From assembly GCA_964057225.1 (NCBI GenBank), contig OZ059894.1:14136001-14200000 (forward strand): 64,000 nucleotides of DNA, in the 5' to 3' direction. The translations under genes were made by a program, and so were the position numbers. Source of the stretch: Auanema rhodensis (Eukaryota > Animalia > Nematoda). The first letter of the stretch is position 1. Each line of letters starts with the position of its first letter. The notes under the pieces were generated by a model. The model saw only the letters and a list, made by a program, of their open reading frames with translations. It was not told the DNA's origin and made no database searches. Positions 288 to 46,446 of the stretch are shown here, piece by piece.

Positions 288-3200
288 TTATCCAAAGGAC
301 CCAAATCTTTCTGTTGTACTTGCTTTATCTGAGGATTCCATGTTGCTATAAATATATATTATTATTATATATATATATACTTAGAAAAGTATATAAATTT
401 TCACTAACGTTTATTTCCGGTTGGTCGTGGAGCATGATGAATCAACGTTGCTCCGCCGCCTTGTAATTCAGCAGTATGCAGTGTATCCGATGATTTTGCC
501 ATTTCAGTTGGCTTCTTCTGAGCTACCATGGCTGATCCAGTAGAAGGTTTAGAGCTAACGGCAGTAGGAACTGGAGGTTGAGGCTTCTGAGGTGTGGATG
601 GCACAACTGGTTGGCGCTGAGAAGGAGTAACAGCTGATTTCACGTTTTGATGTTGTTGTTGTTTTTGCTGTTGAGGTGTTGCTTGTGATTGAGCAGAAGC
701 ATGGGTCTTTGCTGAAGCTTGCGCCTGAGCTCTAGCCTGAGCTTGTAAGTCATTCTGTGCTTTAATCTGAAGAAAGATGAATACAAAATTTAATCAAAGT
801 GTCCTACTTGAGCATCTTTTTGTGCTTTGAGAGCTTGTGATCGCGCTTGAGCTTCAGCTTGAGCTTTAGCCTAAAAATATCTTCTTTGAGCATAGTCTTA
901 TTTTTTTACACTACCTGAGCTTCTTCTTGAGCTTTTTTGACGGATAATGCTCGAGCTTGAGCTTCTGCTTGCGCCTTAGCTTTTGCCTCCGCTTGAGCTT
1001 TTTGAGCAGCTTGAGCTCTAGCTTGAGCTTCTGCTTGAGCTCTGGCTTGAGCCTCTTCTTGAGCCTTTTTAAGGGATAATGCTCGAGCCTGAGCTTGAGC
1101 TTGAGCATTTGCTTGCGCTTCTGCTTGAGCTTTTTGGGCAGCTAGCATACGTTGCTGAGCTTCACTTTGTGCTTTAGCCTGAGCTTCCTGAGCTTTCTTC
1201 AAAGCTTCTTCTTGTGCTTTTTTTGCTTGCTCTTGCGCGACTTGTAAAGCTCGAGCTTGAGCTATTCGAGCCTCTGCAGCTTTTCTTTCAGCGTCAGCTT
1301 GCTCACGAGCCTATAAACGATTCATAAACATGTATATACTCTATAAACAACTTACAGCTTGTTCTTTAGCTTCCATCTCAGCTTGATTAAACTGACCACC
1401 ATTTTTCTAAATTTCAATCAACTACTTTAAAGAAGTAATTTGAACAATTACCTGATGCTGTGCCTGTGCTACTTTTGCGGCTGCTGCTTGTATGGCAGCA
1501 GCTTGCTGAGCCTTAAAAAGCAAGATTAGATTCAAGGATTCAGAAATCTAAGATTATGTATTCACCTTGGCTATCTGTTGTTGCTGGAGCATTCGTTGTC
1601 GTTCTTCCAATGCCTTCTTCTCTTGTTCTGTTTTTTCGACTACAGCTGGACTAGAAACGACGACTTCATTCGCTTCAAAGATTAACCCTTATTTTCATTT
1701 TAAAATAAAGTTCAAACTTTGTTGTTGATTAGCCAAACTCAGAATTTGACCTAGTACAGCTTCTTTAGCTTGTTGTGGATTCGATGTAGCTGGTGCTACT
1801 GGTTGATTACCTCCTAATACTCTGAAGCCTGAACTACGACGAGGCTGGATGATAACCTAAAGTTGTAACAATTAGTGTTGAAATCCTAATTTTTAACAAA
1901 GTGCTTTAGATATTTCAAATTTCAAGAAATAAAAAACAAGAAGTAACCTCGTCATCTGACTCTTCTTCCGAAGATGTAGCATCATGTCGTTCACTTCCTA
2001 AAATAAAATAATTAATGTAAATTCAGATAATATAAATATATTTTTTTAATAATTTAAAAACTATACTATGTGTTGTGTTCCACTCAAATAGAATCTAATC
2101 TAATTCAATCAAATTAAAAAATAAAATAAAGATGAAAACCGTTAGTGAAAACTCATCACGCCAAAGTTTTCAAAAGATCACATTGTACGGGCATAAACAT
2201 GATTTTTAATTTCTCAATTTTGATAGTTTATTCAAAAAGGTAAAGTTGAGAAATCATTCCAACCTATCCAACAACTACTGCTTGCTGTTCCGGGAAGCTG
2301 AGGTACAAGTCCAAATAAGTTGAAAGGGCCTAGAAGGGATCCAAGAAATATGTTTTTTTATTTTGGATACTTCAAATGTAAGTGGTGTCCAAATTGAGGT
2401 AAGTAAGAAAAACATTAGTTTTACTTAAAAATTTAAATTTCATTTGAATTAAAGATTAAGTAATTGGATTAAAACATTACAAAACATTTTTCAAAAAGAC
2501 ATTGATGATATTGGAGAAAAAAAAAGAAACTTTTACACAGATTAACTTTTCCTCAACAAATATCTTCGATCTGTCTTTTAATCGGACAATTTATGAAAAA
2601 AATATTTAGTTGAATTTGAGTAAACGAAATTCTTCAACTTTTCTTCACATAATTATTTATATTTTATTTTATTAAACACAACGTAGGTGGCTAAAAGCCA
2701 GCTGACCTATTGTTAGATGAAAACGACAGAAAACATGAGGTTGAATTACTTTGGAAACTATAGAATTGAAGTTTTAAAATAAGATAATAAACACAAAATA
2801 TAAAAGATAACATATATTAAAAATATATTTAAAGATTAGAATTGTTTTTCATTTTTTAATTTTTATAATATATTAGAATGTATCCAATATTTTAATAAAG
2901 TTGTAAGCATGTATACAGGTTGAAGGATTTTTCGGAATGCAAACTTTAATAAACTTGTATCAATCAGATTATTATTATAATATTTATACATATTATGTAT
3001 ATATATTGTGTTATTTATTATTTATTTGTCTATGAAAATTATTTTATTCTTCTATTATTCTGAAAAAAAATTAAAAATATAACTGAAAATAAAATTTTGA
3101 ATATCGTTGTTTCTCAAAAATAATAGACATATGTATGTATTACACAGCATGGGTATGCAGAATTTCGATTGATTAGTAGGAAAACAAATGAAAACGTTTA

Positions 3201-34029: not shown

Positions 34030-35930
34030 CTAAGCTTGTTTCTTCAATCTCTTGCTTTCAATTCTTCTCGCAACTTCTGCACTGGTTCGCTCATTGACAG
34101 CAAGCATATCTTCACGAATTTTGTTCGCTAGTTCCAGAACATCTTCAGAACTTTTCTAAATATTTCAGAAGTAAAAAATGAAAAACATATTATACTAACT
34201 CCTTTGGTACAAACAGGTGGCAAAACCTCTACTATGATTTCTCCATCGCTGTGGAAATATCTATCTTTTCTCGAATAGAATGGTGTGTATTCTGAAGTAA
34301 CAATTGGCACAATTGGAATTTGAGCCTGAAACCATGAAGCTCCATAGAGAAAAAAATAATTTGAAACCCACGTTAACAGCAATATTGAAAGCACCTTTCT
34401 TGAATGATAGCATGCCACCCTTGGCATTTCTGGTCCCCTCTGGGAAAATCCAGAGCTGACAAAATGAATTATTGAGTTACTCTACAATTAAATCTCTTAC
34501 CTTAAGATTTTTCTGGGTTAACTTTTCTACGCATTGATCAACTGTACTCATTGCTTTCTCTCTATTGAACCGATTAATGAAAATACAATTAGCCTGCAAG
34601 ATTGAATAAAATTCTCTACAAGTTTTACACACTGATCCCTCGTTACATATTTTTCAAAACTCAAACAAAGATGAGAAGTATCTTCTGCGCTGTTATACCT
34701 TCTCTCATTCCTTCACCGTTTCGGAACTATTGACACTTGCACTCACATCGAGCACAATCCCGGTTAGTCTGATGTACAGAAAGCGAGATGAGCGTATCTC
34801 TTCATACTCTTGTTCATAAGATCTGATAGACCTCGAAGAAAACACTCAATACAACAACCGTAATATAGCAATAAAGAGTTTTAAACCTTTCAAGCAATAT
34901 AAACCATCTTACAAACTGGGAAACACTTAACCACAAAGGCAGTGTAATTTCAGATTTTCTGACTAGAATTAAATAGAAGAAATACCCATCCGTTTCGAAT
35001 ATACAGGTATATATCAGTTTCCAAAGTATACGTATGTATGACCAAGCGGACTAAAACATCCCTCTCTTCGGGACAAATAATAACTCTCAACAAGAATTTC
35101 TTTCGTATTTCACCCGATTTCTTCTTTTTTCCTAACAAAAACCACACACAGACACACAGACACATACATAGAGACATATATATGTAGACACCATCACATA
35201 GTACACACGGATCCCATTTAATAAATTTTGTGAATAGAAGCAAAAGAAACCATATTTCTTCTTATTTACGGAGCATATATGACAAAATGGATATTCTAGA
35301 AGATAATGGAACCTACCATTAAGCTGCAAGTATTAAAGAAAGGTATGTATTTCAAAGAACTTTTCATCATCACAACTCCTCTCGGAGGCCAGACATGTGT
35401 CATCACAACGATGTCAATCGTACTCTAGAAAAAAATAAACTTAAATACTAGACAGTTTTTTCTACTTTTCTTTAAATAATTAAAACAAAACTATCAACTT
35501 ACTTGATGATTGCAAATCACAACAGCTGGTCCTTTCAAGTCTTTTAGATGTTCATCGAATCCCCTAACTTCAACCTTGATACCAGTCCACATACACCAGT
35601 ATCGGAAGCTGTGAAATATGACATCCGCTCCCTGAAAAATATTATAAGAATAAAATGTTGAAAAAAGTGTTAGTTTCTCCAAAATCTTTGAATATCAAAC
35701 TTTAATTAATTTCAGACACAATAAACTAACTAGAATATGAGAAGCACATTGAAGAAATATAAAATACATACTTCTTGTTTGATAAAGGACGGTATCATCA
35801 GAATATGGCAAAGAACTCCATGTAAGAAGATTGTGATGTAGAAAAAAATTATTTTAACATAGTATTGAAAGGCTGTCGAGAATTTGAACAGCACGAAAAA
35901 TGCTATAGCGAACAGTATCAATAACCACAT
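34030..35930 (-). CDS. 1-acyl-sn-glycerol-3-phosphate acyltransferase (AGPAT1/2; acl-1/acl-2-like)
   Basis: Acyltransferase blocks NHQSTID, FINR, WIFPEGTRN, FKKGAF and PIVPIV. Confidence 0.93.
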
Positions 35931-37842
35931 ATCTCTAAAAAAAACAATGATACACGTGTTAATCATTTCATTACTAATGGAAATTCAGAATCCTCTATGA
36001 ACCCATAAAGAACGGAGTTGTCGTTCTACACAAACAGAAGATGTACAAAGATAAGAAATTATATACGAACATTATCACAGAATAATTAAGACTTATCGTC
36101 TGATAATATTTTAGAGTACAAAACAAAGCTTTCAAGAAATCGTATCTTCTTAGCAATCATTTAAATCAATATCTCAATCATTCGGCTAGTAACAACCACC
36201 CCCCCCCCCCTTCCTTTAAAAGACCTAAGATATTTTATATCACGCTATACATCTGAGTTTTCACAGCACTTCCATTATATTTCAGTGGTAACTTCTGCTC
36301 AAAAAATTCAAAATCAGTTACACGAAAATATAAGAAACAGGAGAAGGCAGAGGCCATAAGTCATGCCATTCTAATTGCTTGAAATAAAAGACGACAAATT
36401 TTCGATCCGTTCACTGCTCGTTACAAGCCCAAGCAAACACACAAGTAGTCGAAAGTTAGACACAGGTCCCCAGATTACGAGAAAGATGGGAAACAGAAAA
36501 CATAAAAGGAGATAGCCGTGAGCTTTGCTGACTTGACCAAAGTCTCAAGAGATCGGAAGACGACTAGTGTGGCCCCACAAGGGCAATTGTCGCCTTATCA
36601 TAGCATGACGATCAAATTTGTTCCACTATCATCCAGCGTATTCCTAAACAAATTGTCAGAGCCAACGTGTTGGATGGATTTCAAATCTCAAAAACCATAG
36701 TTTTTGCTAGAAACTAAGCACACTTATACACACAACAATTACTTAATTTACTATATATTGATGGGATTTTCAATCGCAATCTGATATGGACAACCGAATC
36801 ATATTTCTAGAAAGTTTTGGAGGAACAGCCAAGTTAATAATAAGAAGTATTAAAGGACAGATGCCAGAACAGGGAAACTTGTTTCCATATTCATGTCAAT
36901 TTGAAAGTAATTACGTACAGTCATAGGGGCAGATTTTTGTTCTCACGTCGTAACCTGCATTGTTGGTTACGACTGGCAATATCGACAATGCGTTCTATTT
37001 GCTATGCTTATCTCAGTTTTCGCGGTAAAGTTATGTAAGAACAGTGTACCCTATAGTAGGCACTCATAATTCCAAAAAAATTTGATTAAATTCGGTGGTA
37101 ACAATTTCATATCAAATTAGACACAAATTGTATGTCAATAAATAAGTGAGTATGACTGACGATTAAAAAAGAATTGTTTTACAGAAAAGGTGACTATAAT
37201 TATTAAAGTTTGATTAAACTAATACCCTACTATGTAACTTTCCAATAAGATTTGGATATTTAAAAGGTTTTTTATTATTCAATATCGAGAGCTGGAAAAC
37301 ACATCACTTACAAGCAATGTGATAAATAACTCAAAAAAACTATTGGTTTCAATGTCAATTTACTTTTCTATTCATATTCGTATCCTTTATTTTATATTTT
37401 ACAAAATGATAAAATCTTGAACACTGAAAAATTGCATATCATATAGAGAAATGCAAATAATTGGTGGAGTACCCTTCATTTTAGTGTTTCGTACATTCAT
37501 GATTTATTTGAAATATAGAACGCTATAGCTTGGACAAAACCCTCCACGTAGATTCAGCGTATAGATTGGAATTTCCTTCTAGAAGTGGAAGTGCAACATA
37601 AAGTTGATTTGTAGCCAGAAAACTTTACTCCAATTTGCTATTTCGTTTCGTTGCGTTTGAAGTTCTGAATGTTCATTGAAGCCTTAATTATTGCCTTATG
37701 AATAGGTAAAATGAAAAGAAAACAAGCCGTGAAAGATATAAAGGATAAATATTTAATTTCTCTCAACCTCTACCAGAACATCCATTGATGATATTAATAA
37801 CTACTTTTTTGGGCAATGATCACCGTGTCGTTCAAATCTTAA

Positions 37843-39822
37843 TTGGAACCAAGCCAACTGTCAGAAGTCTTGTTCTCTCTTATTTTCTTTCTTGTCCTAT
37901 TCGTTCTCACAAATACACTACGGACAAATGAACAACCAAGAGGAAAGAGAGGAGCGAAGAGATAGAGAGATAGAGTTGGCTGAGCGCCAATAGAGAGAGC
38001 TGGCGCTCTGCCAGCGTTCTGGCAAGCTGCCAATTTGGAAGATGGCCAAATGCTAGTCTTTATAAATAGAATTGTCGGTTGATCATATTGAGCACCTACT
38101 AACCTTCGTGATAAAAGACTGCAATGTCAAGGGAAATGTTTTTCTTACTTTGCTAGAACATCAACTTATTTTTGAATCTAGAAACTGTAAGTCGTTTTAA
38201 ACAATGCCATCACTTTTTCAATGATCTTATTTTATTTCTACCATATGTTTGAGAATGATTGGTTAATATTCAGTTTAATTATGTTTTTAGAATTCAATCG
38301 TCCTGATATTTCTATCTTTTCACTTTTGTACATTCATTCTAAATTATATTATCTAACTTAAATTATTGAACATGAAGGATCAATTTAGAGATACACGTTT
38401 TTTTTCTTTTTCATAAAGTATATAGATGCCAACAACAATTTGTCAGCGGTTGGACCAGCCTTTTCCGATCAATTATTCAGCACTTTCCTACTATTACCAC
38501 AGACAAGACTTATTTCTGACTTTTTATATAGCCTTACAAAACTGTTGTACATTTCTTCTATATTCTGCTTTCGCCCCTGGTTCCAGTGCTCGTTTAGCTA
38601 GGATCGAATTACCCTGCCGACGAAGAAGTGACATTGATTTCTGAGCTGAAGGGTAATGGCAGCCGTGCAGCCATATATGGGAGTTTGTGTATCTACATAA
38701 ATAGAGCAGCTCTTTCCTTAATAGAATCCATTTATAAACCCCTAGTCAGTTAACAATCATTCTATATTTCAATCTTTACCACTTAAACACGATAGAAATA
38801 TGGCTAAAGACAAGCGAACTGTATCTTTAAAATTTTCTTGATTATTTGTTTCCCCATCAAAACAGGAAGAATTGATTGTACTATTTTGGAATCTAAGATA
38901 AGAATATCAAGTATAATACATATCCTTACATCTCACATCCAATATTTATTATTTTAAACCAACAATAACCATAAATGATTTCCAATCTAACGAATCAGTC
39001 TTAAATTTAGTTTATAGAAAGTAATTATATTCTCACAGCAAAAATAACATATGAAAGAAATTTCGTCTATTCGATGTTTTTTCACTACCCTGCTTGTTTA
39101 AAAAACTATTTTCTCGAATAATGTTTCGTATCACATAACATAGATATGGGTTTTGTGTATTGGCTTCGGGCCAACGAGTTCTTTTCAGTCGTTTCAGTAC
39201 TACTGTTCCAATCGCTGTTTGGAAAAATGCCAAGATTATAAAACGTTAAGATGGGAAAAAAGTGGAATTTCCAAATCCGAAACGAATTCGTTTATCAAGA
39301 ACGCTCATTTAATTCAGTAATTTTTGTTAATTTGTTAATATATTTTTTTCTGAAACTTCCGCATTCAACTTTTGAATTAAAAAATTTACATTCTTATTAG
39401 AGAAAATCGTCGGGTAATCTAAAAATGTGATGTATTTCTAAATTCTTTCTAACACGGATTCTGAACTGGTTGAATATAGTTATAAAAGAAAGCTGCGATT
39501 CTTACATAAAGCCCTTCATCTTGAAACTATTTTGTTAGCTTGTCTATTTTTATTGTTTTCGATAACGTCAAAAACTTCGAAAACTTTTCATTTTCCTCTA
39601 GTCTCCCATTATTTTATATATTTTGCTATTGATTAAGTTATTTGAAAATAATGAATCTGAAGGCGTGATCCCTTTGTTCATGCTTATGTTACTCTCAGCT
39701 TTGACTTGGCTCTAAAAGCGACCATGAAATAGGCAACTAACAACCAAGAACAAGCCACATGTGCTGGAACAGAGCCAAATTTTTTTGACCTTTTAGTAGA
39801 TATTTTGCTGGCGCACTGCCAA
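37843..39822 (+). promoter_or_regulatory. Homotypic cluster of nine NFI-type sites with a TATA box (38061-38068)
   Basis: YTGGM-N5-GCCAR at 37843, 37976, 38000, 38019, 38035, 39160, 39219, 39764 and 39808. TATAAATA follows the four tandem sites, and a GTAAGT donor follows at 38187. Confidence 0.8.
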
Positions 39823-42800
39823 AAAGCCCAAGAGCTTGTTGAGAATTTGGGAAAACTGAATTTGGTAGAAGATAGGCGTACTTCTACTCAGACCACCTCA
39901 ACGGATCATCACTGTTGATAAATGAAGATGGTCCTTAAAGAGTTGAACCTGCTAGATACAGCTAGCAGAGTCGGAGACACGCCAGAGACGCAGGGTGTCC
40001 GTCAGCCTCCCCCTTCCCTAGCCAACACCAGCCCCATTCGTCGGCCTGGTGAGTGAGCCTGTCCGTCCTATTCCTCATGTTTTCTTTCTTCACTTTCCTT
40101 TTATAGCATACATGACAGTTCAATATGCCTGTTGTATTTGATGCTACATTTTTCTTCCTGTAAACACGTGAAGATCTTCAAAATATCTGATCCGATGCTG
40201 GTTGAAAAATTCACTGAGCCTATGTGTTTGCTAAAACCAATTTTCTTGATCTTTAACTTATTTTTTCCAGTATATATCATTGAAGCAACTATATATTTCA
40301 AATAGCTAGTGTTGTACTGCATTGTGTTTATGCTGTGAGATGTATAAGAGAAGGCGAGAGAACTTCTGAAACCGAGAAATAAAGAAGAGAAATAGAGAAA
40401 TAGAGAGAAAGAGTGGTGTTGGGGCCGGGGTGTGTATGTGGTTGGCTGGTTGGTGTGGAGAGGAGACCGAGCGCTGTGTCTGGTTGGGTGGTTGCTGTGT
40501 GTCTCTTCTGTCCGTGTCGAGCGTGTGAGCGTCTTCTCGTTCCTTTGCCCTGTGTTGCTGAGATCGTCGTCACTTATGCTAATCAATATAAACTTTTTTG
40601 GCAACTTGTTATCCGACAGCTCTTCCTTTCACATGTGCTGTAATAGTTGAGCATATTGCAAAGAAAGAATTTGGGTCAACATGTAGCACTTCGCTACCAT
40701 ACGTCTGAGATCTTGGCTGATCCTCACTGAGTTGCGTCATTTTCTGTGGATCAATCAATATATTAGCATAGCGAAAATATAATTATTTATTTGCCATTTG
40801 TGCTAAGGCCTAGAAAGACTCATAGTTGCTTTTTCATTTCAACTTGACTTGTGTAAATTACTTTTATTTTGCAGCTTCAGCCCCATGTAATTGCTTCTGA
40901 ATATTTCTTATGGCTTTTATATCCTTGACAGCAAGCTTGTAATTGAATGCTTCTGTCCCCTTACGGTACCAATCATTTTCATTTTTGTTTTTGTTAATAT
41001 GTTCATCCTTACGTTAAGCACTTTTGTACGTTGTTATCTACTGCAAATGCATTGATTGTTTATATTTTACCATTGTGAGGTAACAATGTTTCTACTAGAA
41101 GTTAAGTAAATTTGAAGATTTCCTATGTTAGTACTCTTTTGACTCAATAACCATAGCAGAGTGGAGGTAGCAATACTGGAAAACGTGCCTCGCACCAAAT
41201 TATCCACTTCATGGGTAGTCGAGGTAGGATAGAGATGACGATGTTAAAATAATTTTCCGCACTGGACAAGGTAACAATGCCGATTATTGTAGTCTCACAT
41301 TGTTTATTATGAGAATTGATGTGCACTGGTTATTCCTCTTGACCGCTTCTTTCAAACCATTGATTTCTAATAAGGCTGCTGACTGGATCCTAGTGCACAT
41401 ACACAGTTGTCTGATGAACAGGTATCGAATGACGACCGTGTATGCGACTCCGAACAGCCGTCACTCATTATCCAGTCCTACATAGTCATGCACCGTTTCC
41501 TTTTTATGGAGTGCCGATATAATTTCTGTTACATAACGATTTCATACGCCATTCTACGGAAGAATAAAAACAAAAAATCGTATCAAAACTAGGGGATTCA
41601 CTTCATAGTTCTTTATCCACTTCTGAATTGCCAATTTCTAATTTAATTTCCAATTTTTAAAAATTTCTTTCGAAATGAGTATTTTTTAAACGTTTTGTTG
41701 TGAGTAAGATGTGCATATTGGAATTTTTGAAGCATTGGGAAGGGGGGTTGAAAATGTTTTTCTTTTTCTCATCTACTGTGTTTGCGTTCGTCAACCCTGA
41801 ATAAAAGTTATAAATGAGTCTATTTAGTTTGTGATTTTACCAATCTTTCAAATTTTTTTCTATAATTTGAATATATATATATATATAATATTTTCTCACA
41901 CTACAACTTGTGTCACATTCGTATCTATTTTGAAGATTGTTCTCAAATGAACTAACCGTGAGAATGAACAGTAGACTTGCACTTATCCTGCTCCGCTAAC
42001 TGTCTTTTTTGATACGACCTGTAAATTTATTTTTTCCTTGCCTTATAAACATATACTGTAGCTGTTTTCAACTTTTTTATAGGCTGAAAAGAACTGTTCT
42101 CAACAGTCTACAGGCATCGGAAAGTTTTCTAATTTTTAACATATGTCTTGCGTCAAGTAGATTCTATATCAGTCCGGCGAAAAATATTGCCTCAAAACAC
42201 GCATCGAGACCCAACATTGGATTGGTCAATGACACCCGCTTTTGCCTCTCTTCATTCTTCTTGCTTTTCTCATTTTTGTTCACATTCTTTTGTTCCATGT
42301 CTTTCGTCCTGTTCTGCTTTCTCTTTTTCTATTCTCTGAATAGGATGCGACTGTCGGATCTCTCAACGTTTATGCAAAATGGTTCGAGCCTCTATCAAAC
42401 ATTTTAAAGAGAAAACTCTTTGTCGTGCTCCTCTGTTGTCATACTCAAATACATGAAGCTTATGTGGTTTTTCCGAACGATGCATGACCATACAAGGGGT
42501 ATTTGAGCAGACAAATAAATTCAGACTTCAAACTCTTGCAACCACTAGAGACCGCTTGAGCTTTTTGCGTAACTAGCTGTTTGTTAAAAGAGCAATTTTC
42601 GTTGATCTGGACCTTTCAGTAAATTGGAGACGTTCATAGGTTCATTATCAAAAAGTCACTTGTCTGATTGTTTTTGTTGGCAATAAGCAACCTCGATGCT
42701 TTCTGCAACTAACTTATTTGCCCCTAGGGCGTTGTCTTGACCCTAGTTTGCCTTTATGTGCTCATTCTTCGATTCTCTTTTTCATCTCTCGCTATATGTT

Positions 42801-43335
42801 GCTTTCCTTTAGCTATCTTTTATTCGTATAAATTCAGTCTTTCGGCGACTCACTTCCTCTTCTGACAATGTCGTGCGGTTCCCAATTCTTACAATGTGAC
42901 TTTTCTAATTTTCTGTGATTTCTTTTTGATTCGGGTAAAGCTTCTATTCACCAATTGCATGTATTCTTGGGAAACGTATCCCTAACACAGTAAATATGGT
43001 ACTCTCTTTGTATGAACATCGAATATCGTTACGCGAATATCATATCATTTCGAGAAAAGTGCTCTAGTGCGAATGCAAACCATGGGCGGAGCTTTTACCC
43101 ACCCACTTTGGCTGTAGTTTTCCAGTCTGTTTATGTCAAATCTGTAAATTTATGTTTTCTGAATGATTTTTCTTTTTTGCGTTTATTTTTCTATAGTATA
43201 TGCTTTGTTTATTATAGATCAATGCTGGGTAGCTGAGATTGTCGATTAGAGAAGCTCAGATATCGACGAAATAAAATCGACCACGACCACAGCTTTTACG
43301 GCACCTTCGTGGTTTTATACGGGTAGAGGATCATC

Positions 43336-46300
43336 ATGATGCAGCAACTAGTCAACGATCTTCGTAAACAAGCTATTTCTAATAAGGAGACTGAACATGA
43401 ATCGATTTCTCGAGTTGGTTCTTCTGGTGTACGTCATAAGCCCATTGCTGTGGTAAGTTCATTAATCCTAACTTAAATACTTGGGTTGTTTATTTCAGAG
43501 CTACTTGAATGACTCTGGTACTGAATCCGATGAAGAACTCGAAATGTTTGGAAGTAAGTTTGATAATTCAACTGTTATATTATTAAGATCACTTCAGTTT
43601 TGAGGCCGTAAATTATACAGTTTTACAGGTTCTTTATTGTTTTTTTTTCAGATGCTATGCAATATCAACGTGATTACGAAGACTTCCTTAGTGGAGCTGC
43701 GAGGCCTCCAGAGCTCTCCGATTTACCTCCCACAGCTGATATTGATGACGTTAGGTTAGTGTATATTCTTGCTATTTATTATTGAATAAAATAACTCTGT
43801 AGAATGACAGGACTAAACTGAAAAAGAATATCTGTAAGATTTATGTGCTAATTGCTCCAGGAAAGATAACAATGAAATAGTCTTCAACTTTCAAAAAAAA
43901 GCAAACCTTTAAATAGACTGGCATTGTTAGCCATATTATTCTCGCTGTTCGCGTATAATTTATCCAACATTCAGATCTTTTTTTTCAATAATATGTTCTG
44001 AAAAACAACATAGTTGGGCCTTTCCTTTTTCTCCCGGTTGTGTTAGAGCTTGATATCGATGAGTTGTATGGCTCTCTCTCTGTTCAGGAGCCATAGTCCG
44101 CATTAGTTACATCTTTGGCTCTAACCACTGTATGGGAAATAAAACAAGTGTGTCTAACATGTAATCTAACTAAGACAGTTACATACTTGAAACCAAAGGC
44201 TGATACATGAAAAATATGATTCAAAGGAGTACTCATTCCATTCTCAAGTTTTAGCCTGAATCAGACGAGCAGACATTCCACTATGGTTAGAGACGCAGGG
44301 TAGGATATGCGCTGTTAGCGAGCACTCTGCACTCTTCTCCGTTTTTCATCTTTCTTCTTTCTTTGTATCGTTATTTCATGTTCTCTGCATCTTTGAGACA
44401 ACTAGCTTGTGGAAGAAAAGTCGCGTTTTGAGCTTCTGATTAATAATTGAACAAATTTCTGTGAAGCCTTTAATTAAATTAACAAATGTACTATAGCATT
44501 TATGAATGAAAATTAAAAATTTTAAGAGTTGTGACGAGGAAATTCAACAAGCTTAGAAAGTCTCTTTTTTTAATTTAGGCCTTATAAGATAGGTTGAGCT
44601 ATAGAAAATAAGGGAGGCTGTAGGTTTCAAAGAGAAACTATGACAAGTGAATAAATTCGCGTCTTTGTCACGACATTCTTCTTCGTTGTTGCATAAAATA
44701 GGAATATATGGGTCATCTCTTGTGATTTATCCAACTATATATATAAACGTTTAATTCATGAATTTATGATAGAATTGGAGGCTCTAAATTAAGGGATTAT
44801 GGTCTATGTGACTAATAATGCGCCATATAGAATATACATATAAATTTTCTATTTTATCAAAGTATGGGTTAAACTTTACTAAAGACAACTATCCGAATCA
44901 ATAGTTTCTCTAAACTGAATTTTTTTTTTAATTGCAAAATGATTTCTGCCAACTTTCGTTGTGTTCGGTCTCGGTAATTAACGTAGTAGTGAAAGTAAAT
45001 AGACAATTTCTCTGAGTGAAGTGAAGATGAGAGAACAATAAAATTTGTTTTACGTAGTTCACTGCTTTTAAAACAGAAAGTACATCGTTTTATTTTAAAA
45101 AATATTTTTTTTAGCTGGGACAGCATTGGTCGTGAGTCTGGAATTTTGACTGGAGATGGTTCCGATTCTGATGAGGACCCGACTACTCCTAAACAGCAAG
45201 TTTTAATTTTGTTTGATTTTTATTTATATACGTAATGTATTGTTTGATGCTATAATGTTTTTATTATGGAAGTCATAAATTAATTTTTAGACGTCGTCGT
45301 ATGGTACTGACTCAGACTTCTCCATCTACAATCAGCAAGGTTTTTTTTAAACTTCTGTGCTTAAGATAAATTTTATTTTACCTTTCTGTGCGATTTTCCA
45401 AATATTCATATACGGATATTTTTAATTTAGCGCATTAAAATTTAGTTTTTTGAACATGATTTTTTTGTTTAACCTTGATTTCTCTACATTGAACACTTAG
45501 TTAAAAAAATCTTTTTATTGTTATATAGTTGCAGTTATGTACTCTACATAGCAATATCTATAGCCATTAAACCTCTATTATACCATCAGAAAGGAAATGA
45601 TTATGAGAAACTTTGCCCAAGCGAATTTGAAATCCCAAAGTGCAAAGTAGACGTTGTAGATATAATGCATTGTTGATATTTTTCGGTGTTAGAAGAACAA
45701 TTTTGAAGTATATAAAAACTTTTGAAAAGGCCCGAAAAAACACTGATTGTGCTTTTATAAATTCCTGACAACTGATGAGCTAATTACTAGTTATTTTATT
45801 CTTATTCAGAAGGCACTTATCTTCTAGAATATATGAAACCTTTTTTACATGTCTGAAATCTCTTCGCCTGTGAAATTTTCTTTTTTTTAAACGATTATAT
45901 ATAAATTTTCTCTTTATAACCTTACAAAGATATATCTCTATAAAATTCACTACCGTTTGCATTAAAATTTTTTTTTATTTCAGCAACAATGTGAATTTCC
46001 ACCAATGTCAATGCTTGGGGAAAAAAGACGCCATGCCGACAGATCTGAGGGAGCCGTTACACCACAAGCCAATGGTCTCGGGTCTCCTAATGGAAAGGGT
46101 TAGTTTAAGAATGTTATATTAAGTTATGTTTTTTTCCATTTTCAGAACGTCCTCGTAATGTAGCTGTCAGACGCTGCCCAGTTCGTTTACTTGTACATCG
46201 TCCTCCAAAGGAAACTGAAAGACCTCTAAATCAGGATGCGTTTGATCCAGGCTCTGAAAATCACGAACCTATTAAAAGATCAAGGCTCTGTCGCCCTATG

Positions 46301-46446
46301 CTGGATTTTGATAAAATGCTCAGGGTATTTAACGTTTTTTTATGGCTATGTTATCTTCCATCTTTTAGAATCGTTTAGACGTAACCGCCGCCGGCTCGGC
46401 GAGTTCGTCTTCAGCGTTTAAATCCTATTCATCTCAGGATAAATAA
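43336..46446 (+). CDS. Uncharacterised disordered protein with RPxLDFxKM motif (OSER1/FAM53-like motif)
   Basis: Spliced frame MMQQLVNDLRKQAIS...DSGTESDEE...KRSRLCRPMLDFDKMLR...SQDK*. One junction (45196 vs 45232 donor) is ambiguous. Confidence 0.7.

What the first reader, a model, noticed from the sequence alone, without database searches (positions are those of the whole stretch)
37843..39822. Nine NFI palindromes in 2 kb, four in tandem before a TATA box: a candidate dedicated NFI-1 response module
Seen in sequence: TTGGA-accaa-GCCAA (37843), TTGGC-tgagc-GCCAA (37976), CTGGC-gctct-GCCAG (38000), CTGGC-aagct-GCCAA (38019), TTGGA-agatg-GCCAA (38035), then TATAAATA (38061) and a GTAAGT donor (38187). 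Two further pairs lie at 39160/39219 and 39764/39808. Every spacer is exactly 5 nt and each has a different sequence, so this is not a tandem duplication. Established: Nuclear Factor I dimers, including nematode NFI-1, bind TTGGC(N5)GCCAA. My rough estimate at about 33% GC is around 0.01 such sites by chance in 2 kb, and I noticed no comparable cluster elsewhere in the window. Inference: the downstream uncharacterised RPxLDFxKM gene (43336-46446) is a primary, dosage-sensitive NFI target, possibly a feedback regulator. The divergent AGPAT is an alternative target.
Basis: partly seen in the sequence, partly recalled or inferred. Interest (0 to 1): 0.85.

Follow-up and report, generated by a model that had tools for sequence, protein, structure and literature searches.

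The report
Conserved NFI-site cluster driving F57A8.1 orthologue
Nine binding sites of the Nuclear Factor I type sit at the promoter and in the first intron of one uncharacterised worm gene; at least eight other rhabditid nematodes, including C. elegans, keep a cluster of such sites at the same gene, so it is probably an ancient direct target of that factor.

Summary
Nine YTGGM-N5-GCCAR palindromes lie at 37843-39822 and nowhere else in the 64 kb window (0.29 expected). They are not repeat copies.

RNA contigs show a GT..AG splice from 38186 to 43218. So four sites and a TATA box sit just upstream of a real non-coding first exon of the downstream gene. That gene is the orthologue of C. elegans F57A8.1, a disordered protein of unknown function.

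In the syntenic Auanema sp. JU1783 locus, seven of the nine sites have counterparts. Half-sites are 64/70 identical and spacers 18/35 (p = 7e-6).

The same gene carries an excess of these palindromes in C. elegans (6 vs 0.3 expected), C. remanei (9 vs 0.6), C. auriculariae, C. angaria and two Mesorhabditis species. Only the 5-nt spacing is enriched (58 sites, against 1-11 for every other spacing). Unselected flanking bases reproduce the extended NFI consensus.

Best reading: a conserved cluster of NFI-1 sites acting as promoter and intronic enhancers of this gene. NFI binding itself, the "dedicated" and "dosage-sensitive" claims and the feedback idea are untested.

This is a new member of a known kind, of moderate interest. 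The scan's notes held no earlier record of this cluster.

The parts
37843..37857 (.). Site 1, TTGGAaccaaGCCAA, a distal upstream site
   Evidence: Conserved in JU1783 (L001 5743): half-sites 10/10, spacer 2/5, flank CTGTCAGAA kept.
37940..37975 (.). GA-rich tract abutting site 2
   Evidence: GAAGAGATAGAGAGATAGA is identical in JU1783. A similar tract lies at 40388-40414.
37976..38049 (.). Array of four sites (2-5, at 37976, 38000, 38019, 38035) with centre spacings of 24, 19 and 16 bp
   Evidence: All four align to JU1783 counterparts. Site 4 has lost its left half there (TAGGC); site 5 is identical apart from one outer flank base.
38061..38068 (+). TATA box (TATAAATA), starting 12 nt after site 5
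   Evidence: Conserved as TATATAAAC in JU1783.
38090..38186 (+). Non-coding exon 1. The 5' end is inferred at about 30 nt after the TATA box; the 3' end is shown by RNA.
   Evidence: Joint 38186->43218, GT..AG, in a contig of run X1 with 30 nt on the exon-1 side. A GTAAG donor is kept in JU1783.
38187..43217 (+). Intron 1 (5031 nt), holding site pairs 2 and 3 and conserved non-coding blocks
   Evidence: Blocks conserved with JU1783: 38403-38723, 39908-40453, 41197-41430, 42252-42354. They match in several frames with stops, so they are non-coding.
39160..39174 (.). Site 6, TTGGCttcggGCCAA
   Evidence: The JU1783 counterpart at L001 6986 has one mismatch (GTCAA), and JU1783 has a further perfect site 31 bp upstream (L001 6955), which points to site turnover.
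39219..39233 (.). Site 7, TTGGAaaaatGCCAA, followed by TATAAAA at 39237-39243
   Evidence: No aligned counterpart in JU1783.
39764..39778 (.). Site 8, CTGGAacagaGCCAA
   Evidence: Conserved in JU1783 (L001 7397): half-sites 10/10, spacer 3/5.
39808..39822 (.). Site 9, CTGGCgcactGCCAA
   Evidence: Absent at the aligned JU1783 position.
39358..41390 (.). Low-depth unspliced RNA contigs inside intron 1, downstream of site pairs 2 and 3. Strand unknown.
   Evidence: table 8. All four runs cover about 40140-40820; none covers 41400-43200.
43218..43451 (+). Exon 2: 5' UTR with a 4-codon uORF (43222-43236) and the start codon at 43336
   Evidence: 43216-43237 is identical in JU1783.
43336..46446 (+). 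Coding region of the target gene: 258 aa in 8 coding exons, the orthologue of C. elegans F57A8.1
   Evidence: Gene model; 75% identical to Auanema sp. JU1783 P0001 over the full length. Introns 43452-43497 and 43554-43651 are seen in RNA from all four runs. Family and C. elegans member.

Best explanation
The nine palindromes are a conserved cluster of binding sites for one dimeric factor of NFI specificity, most likely the nematode NFI-1 orthologue. They control the gene whose coding exons lie at 43336-46446, the orthologue of C. elegans F57A8.1. Four sites are packed into 74 bp ending 12 nt before a TATA box, and together they form the core-proximal promoter of a non-coding first exon (shown: its 3' end at 38186 splices to 43218). 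One site lies 133 bp further upstream. Two pairs lie 1.0 and 1.6 kb into the 5-kb first intron, where they probably act as enhancers or alternative internal promoters (inferred). Each dimer reads the two TGGM/GCCA halves and ignores the 5-nt spacer. This explains why related species keep the halves and change the spacers, and why sites are lost and replaced nearby while the cluster persists. Sites 3, 4 and 5 are only 16-19 bp apart centre to centre. They probably cannot all be occupied at once, so the array may work by raising the chance of occupancy, or by sharpening the response to factor concentration, rather than by holding four dimers (inferred).
For: The sites are real and far beyond chance and are not repeat copies. 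The splice 38186->43218 links the TATA-proximal array to the gene. In the syntenic JU1783 locus (SF3B2-ZPR1-AGPAT-X-YIF1), six strict sites and one near-site lie in the same interval, and 7 of 9 window sites have counterparts. Half-sites are 64/70 identical and spacers 18/35, against a 47% background (Fisher p = 7e-6), and the TATA box is kept. Orthologous loci are enriched over shuffles: C. elegans 6 vs 0.32, C. remanei 9 vs 0.56, C. auriculariae 10 vs 0.66, M. spiculigera 9 vs 0.67, C. angaria 5 vs 0.45, M. belari 4 vs 0.41. All six C. elegans sites have collinear counterparts in C. remanei. Only the N5 spacing is enriched: 58 sites against 1-11 for N0-N11, and only in this gene's regulatory intervals. 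Flanks outside the search pattern are Y in 52/56 and R in 53/56 sites, and the spacer edges are A/T enriched, giving YTGGCA-N3-TGCCAR. Literature: C. elegans NFI-1 binds TTGGC(N5)GCCAA, and that binding activity disappears from extracts of the nfi-1 null (PMC1277823). Of 55 strict ChIP-seq regions, 49 carry this motif (PMC3337475, citing Whittle 2009).
Against: No binding data for this locus could be consulted; Whittle et al. 2009 is not held in the library. I could not check that this genome encodes NFI-1. The exon-1 splice rests on one contig in one of four runs from a single study. The contigs of the other three runs begin at the acceptor (43216/7), so most mRNA may be trans-spliced or start elsewhere. 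The start site after the TATA box was not seen. The two strongylid loci show no excess (0 vs 0.97 and 3 vs 0.98). Three of the C. auriculariae sites lie in a local repeat unit and are not independent. Only this locus was examined, so how exceptional the cluster is genome-wide is unknown.
Confidence: 0.65

Rival explanations
1. The sites are functional and conserved but are read by another dimeric factor with the same TGGM-N5-GCCA specificity, not by NFI-1.
For: No binding data for this locus. The presence of nfi-1 in this genome was not checked. Four of the nine sites use a TGGA half instead of TGGC.
Against: In C. elegans extracts, all activity binding the NFI site is lost in the nfi-1 null (PMC1277823). 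The pooled sites reproduce the extended NFI consensus, including unselected flanks and the strict 5-nt spacing. I know of no other nematode factor with this specificity (my own knowledge).
Confidence: 0.1
2. The cluster mainly serves the divergent AGPAT gene (34128-35966, minus strand), or acts as a shared bidirectional element or a boundary between the two genes.
For: AGPAT lies 1.9 kb from the array in divergent orientation. The AGPAT-X adjacency is kept in JU1783, C. bovis and C. angaria.
Against: The array directly abuts a TATA box and an exon that point away from AGPAT and splice into gene X. In C. elegans and C. remanei no AGPAT is called within 10 kb upstream, yet 6 and 9 sites remain. 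In C. bovis and C. angaria the sites lie within 800 bp of gene X's start codon or inside gene X.
Confidence: 0.1
3. The inner pairs (39160/39219 and 39764/39808) are promoters of a separate non-coding transcript within intron 1 (about 39.3-41.4 kb), not enhancers of gene X.
For: TATAAAA at 39237 directly follows site 7. Low-depth unspliced RNA covers 39358-41390 in up to four runs while the rest of the intron is empty. The block 39908-40453 is conserved and non-coding.
Against: The strand and ends of that RNA are unknown, since it comes from contigs only. JU1783 lacks the TATAAAA and site 9. No Rfam family matches. The RNA could equally be nascent pre-mRNA or enhancer RNA.
Confidence: 0.25
4. 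The cluster is a chance, compositional or repeat-borne artefact without function.
For: None found.
Against: Expected 0.007-0.29 against 9 observed. No repeats carry the sites. The enrichment is specific to one spacing. The cluster recurs at the orthologous gene in eight other species, and half-sites are conserved far more than spacers in the sister-species comparison.
Confidence: 0.01

Closest known systems
In vivo NFI-1 binding sites of C. elegans (Whittle et al. 2009, as summarised in PMC3337475 and PMC13637464)
   Same: Same motif, TTGGC(N5)GCCAA or TTGGCA-N3-TGCCAA, located in promoters and conserved between species (PhyloNet matrix H01M10.2.1).
   Different: Those reports describe 55 bound regions, generally treated as single motif sites. 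Here one gene carries 6-10 sites per species, kept across Auanema, Mesorhabditis and Caenorhabditis. Whether F57A8.1 is on the published list could not be checked.
Homotypic clusters of transcription-factor sites in promoters and enhancers, such as the Bicoid sites of the Drosophila hunchback P2 promoter (my own knowledge)
   Same: Several sites for one factor are packed next to a core promoter. Individual sites turn over in evolution while the cluster persists. The expected result is a sharpened or more robust response to factor level.
   Different: Here the factor is NFI-type and the sites are palindromes for a pre-formed dimer. Three of the sites are so close (16-19 bp) that full simultaneous occupancy is doubtful. 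No concentration-response data exist.
Mammalian CTF/NFI-dependent TATA promoters (my own knowledge: the proline-rich CTF1 activation domain is reported to contact the basal machinery)
   Same: An NFI site lies a short distance upstream of a TATA box.
   Different: Classical examples have one or two sites. This promoter has four in 74 bp, one further upstream and four more in the first intron.

Membership tests
NFI (CTF/NF-I) binding site | Palindrome TTGGC(N5)GCCAA with a spacer of exactly 5 nt | tested here: met
   Nine matches to YTGGM-N5-GCCAR. Other spacings give 0-1 in the region. Across 11 loci, N5 gives 58 sites against 1-11 for N0-N11.
NFI (CTF/NF-I) binding site | Extended consensus: outer T/A flanks and TGGCA/TGCCA preference | tested here: met
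   Positions outside the search pattern: -1 is Y in 52/56 sites, +1 is R in 53/56. The first spacer base is A in 25/56 and the last is T in 28/56.
NFI (CTF/NF-I) binding site | Half-sites are constrained and the spacer is free, the footprint of a dimer that does not contact the spacer | tested here: met
   Window against JU1783: half-sites 64/70 identical, spacers 18/35, background 47%, Fisher p = 7e-6.
NFI (CTF/NF-I) binding site | Bound by NFI protein in vitro or in vivo | not testable with these tools
   There are no ChIP or EMSA data for this species. The C. elegans ChIP paper is not held.
NFI (CTF/NF-I) binding site | The genome encodes an NFI protein | not tested
I infer its presence from the single nfi-1 gene of C. 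elegans (PMC1277823).
TATA-containing RNA polymerase II promoter with a non-coding first exon | The first exon is spliced to the coding exons | tested here: met
   Joint 38186->43218, GT..AG, in a contig of run X1.
TATA-containing RNA polymerase II promoter with a non-coding first exon | Transcripts start about 25-35 nt after the TATA box | tested here: inconclusive
   Only 30 nt of exon 1 are in the contig, and contigs cannot show starts. The TATA box is conserved in JU1783.
Homotypic cluster of transcription-factor binding sites | Several sites for one factor within a few hundred bp, beyond chance, and maintained across species with turnover | tested here: met
   Turnover is seen at sites 6, 7 and 9.
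TSSC4 (the source databases' name for the C. elegans orthologue) | Significant match to the Pfam TSSC4 family or to solved TSSC4 chains | tested here: not met
   No TSSC4 hit at E<=10 for eight family members. A profile of 15 members finds no TSSC4 chain in the PDB at E<=10. Disordered proteins can escape such tests, so the label is unverified rather than disproved.
Repeat-borne or transposon-borne motif copies | The sites lie in copies of a longer repeated unit | tested here: not met
   No repeat family in 36000-43400 carries the sites. The exception is in another species: three C. auriculariae sites lie in a local repeat.

The most novel reading that the evidence does not exclude
The F57A8.1-family gene is the ancestral principal effector of NFI-1 in rhabditid nematodes. 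Its multi-site promoter converts NFI-1 concentration into a threshold response. This would explain the unusual haploinsufficiency of nfi-1 reported in C. elegans (PMC13637464), and perhaps its egg-laying, movement, pumping and lifespan defects.
Probability: 0.15. Interest if true: 0.65.

Novelty: new member of a known kind. Interest (0 to 1): 0.45.

Why it matters
NFI-1 is the only NFI factor in nematodes. Its loss gives clear phenotypes and an unusual haploinsufficiency, yet the target genes responsible for them have not been identified; the one strongly down-regulated gene, Ce titin, has no excess of NFI sites and may be an indirect target (PMC1277823).

A gene that has kept 4-10 NFI-type sites in front of it across Auanema, Mesorhabditis and Caenorhabditis is a strong candidate for a key direct target. 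The idea can be tested at once in C. elegans, using the existing nfi-1 null and existing ChIP data.

The target is a conserved, fully disordered protein. It has an invariant DSGTES motif, upstream open reading frames and, in Caenorhabditis, an unusually large upstream region. These features suit a tightly regulated regulator better than a housekeeping gene.

The locus is also a clean example of binding sites being lost and replaced under selection for the cluster as a whole.

Tried and rejected
- **Repeat origin.** The repeat finder shows no shared flanks around the sites.
- **Known RNA gene in the interval.** Rfam at E<=1 finds nothing in 36000-43400.
- **Hidden protein gene in intron 1.** The conserved blocks match JU1783 in several frames on both strands, with stops and frameshifts. 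The ORF at 39922 has a stop in JU1783.
- **Identity of the protein.** Pfam on single exons and on eight full-length members gave nothing. The PDB profile search gave nothing. Three ESM Atlas queries gave nothing usable. My recollection of a resemblance to vertebrate FAM53 could not be tested and is not claimed.
- **Heat-shock elements.** F57A8.1 is an HSF-1-bound, heat-induced gene in C. elegans (PMC6927752). No canonical three-unit heat-shock element lies in the Auanema interval.
- **Reading Whittle et al. 2009.** The paper is not held under its PMC id or its DOI. The supplements of the G3 paper are not held. Only one open paper mentions F57A8.1.
- **My first relaxed pattern** had the wrong spacer length and is void.
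- **Missing loci.** Diploscapter (P0023) and Nippostrongylus (P0011) are not on record.

Full report
**Observation**

The pattern YTGGM-N5-GCCAR matches nine positions: 37843, 37976, 38000, 38019, 38035, 39160, 39219, 39764 and 39808. It matches nowhere else in the 64 kb window, and dinucleotide-preserving shuffles give 0.29 matches. From local base composition I expect 0.007 sites in 2.2 kb. With the relaxed core TGG-N7-CCA, 9 of the window's 17 matches fall here, while every other spacing gives 0 or 1 in the region. The sites do not sit in copies of a longer repeat, and all spacers differ. TATAAAT at 38061 starts 12 nt after site 5, and GTAAGT follows 38186.

**Which gene the cluster belongs to**

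Four public runs from one study hold spliced contigs of the downstream gene. One contig of run X1 joins 38186 to 43218 across a GT..AG gap of 5031 nt. All four runs show the next two introns.

- Only 30 nt of exon 1 are in that contig, so the start site after the TATA box is not shown.
- The contigs of the other three runs begin at the acceptor. Much of the mRNA may therefore carry a spliced leader or start elsewhere.
- Low-depth unspliced contigs cover 38702-38892 and 39358-41390, downstream of the inner site pairs. The rest of the intron is empty.

**The gene**

An exhaustive HMMER search with the exon carrying RPMLDFDKM found one relative, a 254-aa protein of Auanema sp. JU1783. Using it as a guide, the window gene encodes 258 aa in eight coding exons and is 75% identical over the full length. 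Exon 5 must use a GC-AG donor.

Profile searches extend the family to strongylids, Mesorhabditis, Diploscapter and Caenorhabditis. The C. elegans member is F57A8.1, next to yif-1. The source databases call it 'Protein TSSC4'. Neither Pfam nor a profile search of solved structures supports that name.

The Atlas model has a mean pLDDT of 0.45, so the protein is probably disordered. The family shares short motifs: DSGTESDEE, SWDS.G.ESGI, EKRR, RR.PVR and RP.LD..KM. Its function is unknown.

**Conservation in the sister species**

The JU1783 locus keeps the gene order SF3B2, ZPR1, AGPAT (minus strand), gene X, YIF1. It has six strict sites, all in the AGPAT-to-X interval.

- MAFFT aligns all five cluster-1 sites and the TATA box.
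- Site 8 aligns, site 9 does not, and site 7 has no counterpart.
- Site 6 has a one-mismatch counterpart, and JU1783 has a new perfect site 31 bp upstream of it.

Over the seven orthologous pairs, half-site positions are 64/70 identical and spacer positions 18/35. Outside the sites the alignment is 47% identical (Fisher p = 7e-6). This is the footprint expected of a dimer that reads two halves and ignores the spacer. Most of the interval cannot be aligned at all, so the conservation of the sites is not a by-product of low divergence.

**Deeper conservation**

I counted TGGM-N5-GCCA in each orthologous locus (10 kb flanks) and compared the count with block shuffles.

| Species | Observed | Expected |
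|---|---|---|
| C. elegans | 6 | 0.32 (maximum 2 in 300 shuffles) |
| C. remanei | 9 | 0.56 |
| C. auriculariae | 10 | 0.66 |
| M. spiculigera | 9 | 0.67 |
| C. angaria | 5 | 0.45 |
| M. belari | 4 | 0.41 |
| C. bovis | 2 | 0.52 |
| Cylicocyclus | 3 | 0.98 |
| Parelaphostrongylus | 0 | 0.97 |

- In C. elegans and C. remanei every site lies upstream of the start codon. Each C. elegans site has a collinear counterpart in C. remanei.
- Site density is 0.285 per kb in the upstream-plus-gene intervals and 0.050 per kb in the remaining 141 kb.
- The enrichment is confined to the 5-nt spacing: 58 sites, against 1-11 for every spacing from 0 to 11.
- Bases outside the search pattern are Y at -1 in 52/56 sites and R at +1 in 53/56. 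The spacer edges favour A and T. Together these rebuild YTGGCA-N3-TGCCAR.
- Three C. auriculariae sites lie in a local repeat unit and are not independent.
- The strongylid loci show no excess. Their promoters may lie beyond the 10 kb I could fetch.

**Which factor**

C. elegans NFI-1 binds TTGGC(N5)GCCAA just as the vertebrate NFI proteins do. Extracts of the nfi-1 null lose all activity on that site (PMC1277823). Of the 55 strict ChIP-seq regions, 49 carry the motif (PMC3337475, citing Whittle 2009). NFI-1 is therefore by far the likeliest reader of these sites. I could not check that this genome encodes NFI-1, and I could not read the ChIP target list. Only one open paper mentions F57A8.1, as an HSF-1-bound, heat-induced gene.

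**Which target**

The array abuts a TATA box and an exon that point away from AGPAT. In C. elegans and C. remanei no AGPAT is called within 10 kb upstream, yet the sites remain. In C. bovis and C. angaria the sites lie next to or inside gene X. Gene X is the better-supported target.

**Mechanism**

- Shown: the sites, their selective maintenance, the splice, and the conserved TATA box.
- Inferred: NFI-1 dimers occupy the proximal array and activate the TATA promoter. The intronic pairs act as enhancers or internal promoters. Centre spacings of 16-19 bp probably prevent full simultaneous occupancy, so the array more likely raises occupancy or sharpens dose dependence.
- The reported haploinsufficiency of nfi-1 (PMC13637464) fits a dose-sensitive readout, but that link is speculation. 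I found nothing bearing on a feedback role.

**Verdict**

This is a new and unusually dense, deeply conserved member of a known kind: a homotypic cluster of transcription-factor sites. It points to a specific candidate NFI-1 target that can be tested directly in C. elegans. The organism is an Auanema species according to earlier scan notes. That fits the closest orthologue and the shared gene order.

Noticed in passing
window 38591-38646: A 56-nt stretch in intron 1 is identical in Auanema sp. JU1783, within a 320-bp conserved non-coding block (38403-38723), although most of the intron cannot be aligned. It has no Rfam match, and the local hairpin is not conserved.
   Followed up: partly
window 39908-40453, and 44290: This conserved, non-coding block just downstream of sites 8 and 9 is transcribed at a low level. 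It includes a GGTGAGTGAGCC donor-like string kept in JU1783. It contains GAGACGCAG (39985), which occurs only once more in the window, in an intron of the same gene (44290; 0.07 expected). It may be a second recurring regulatory motif.
   Followed up: partly
window 45195/45196: Exon 5 of the gene must end in a GC-AG donor (AACA|GCAAGT) to keep the reading frame. The orthologous JU1783 donor is a canonical AACA|GTAAGT. I did not check this with reads.
   Followed up: partly
window 43222-43236; L001 about 9900; L009 about 9855: A 4-codon uORF (ATGCTGGGTAGCTGA) starts 4 nt into exon 2 and is identical in JU1783. C. elegans F57A8.1 has ATGCTGCACGACTAA 2 nt after its acceptor. Exon 1 also carries a short uORF in both Auanema species. 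This may indicate translational control.
   Followed up: partly
protein family alignment A4 (window residues about 44-52): DSGTES followed by an acidic run is nearly invariant in the family. From my own knowledge it has the form of a DSGxxS phosphodegron of the beta-TrCP type, which would suggest regulated instability.
   Followed up: no
L004 3950-4270 (C. auriculariae): Three NFI-type sites lie in copies of a local repeat unit (aaaaaggNtcTTGGACTGGNGCCA...), so in that species the cluster grew partly by local duplication.
   Followed up: partly
L007 24995 and 25077 (M. spiculigera): Two NFI-type sites 82 bp apart lie about 800 bp upstream of a neighbouring metallophosphatase gene, which may be a second target.
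   Followed up: no
L009 and L010, 1-10000: The region upstream of F57A8.1 in C. elegans and C. remanei is largely gene-free for 7-10 kb, which is large for Caenorhabditis and suggests a complex regulatory region.
   Followed up: no
window 2688-2700: An isolated TGGCTAAAAGCCA without the consensus flanks is the only other full TGGC-N5-GCCA in the window.
   Followed up: no
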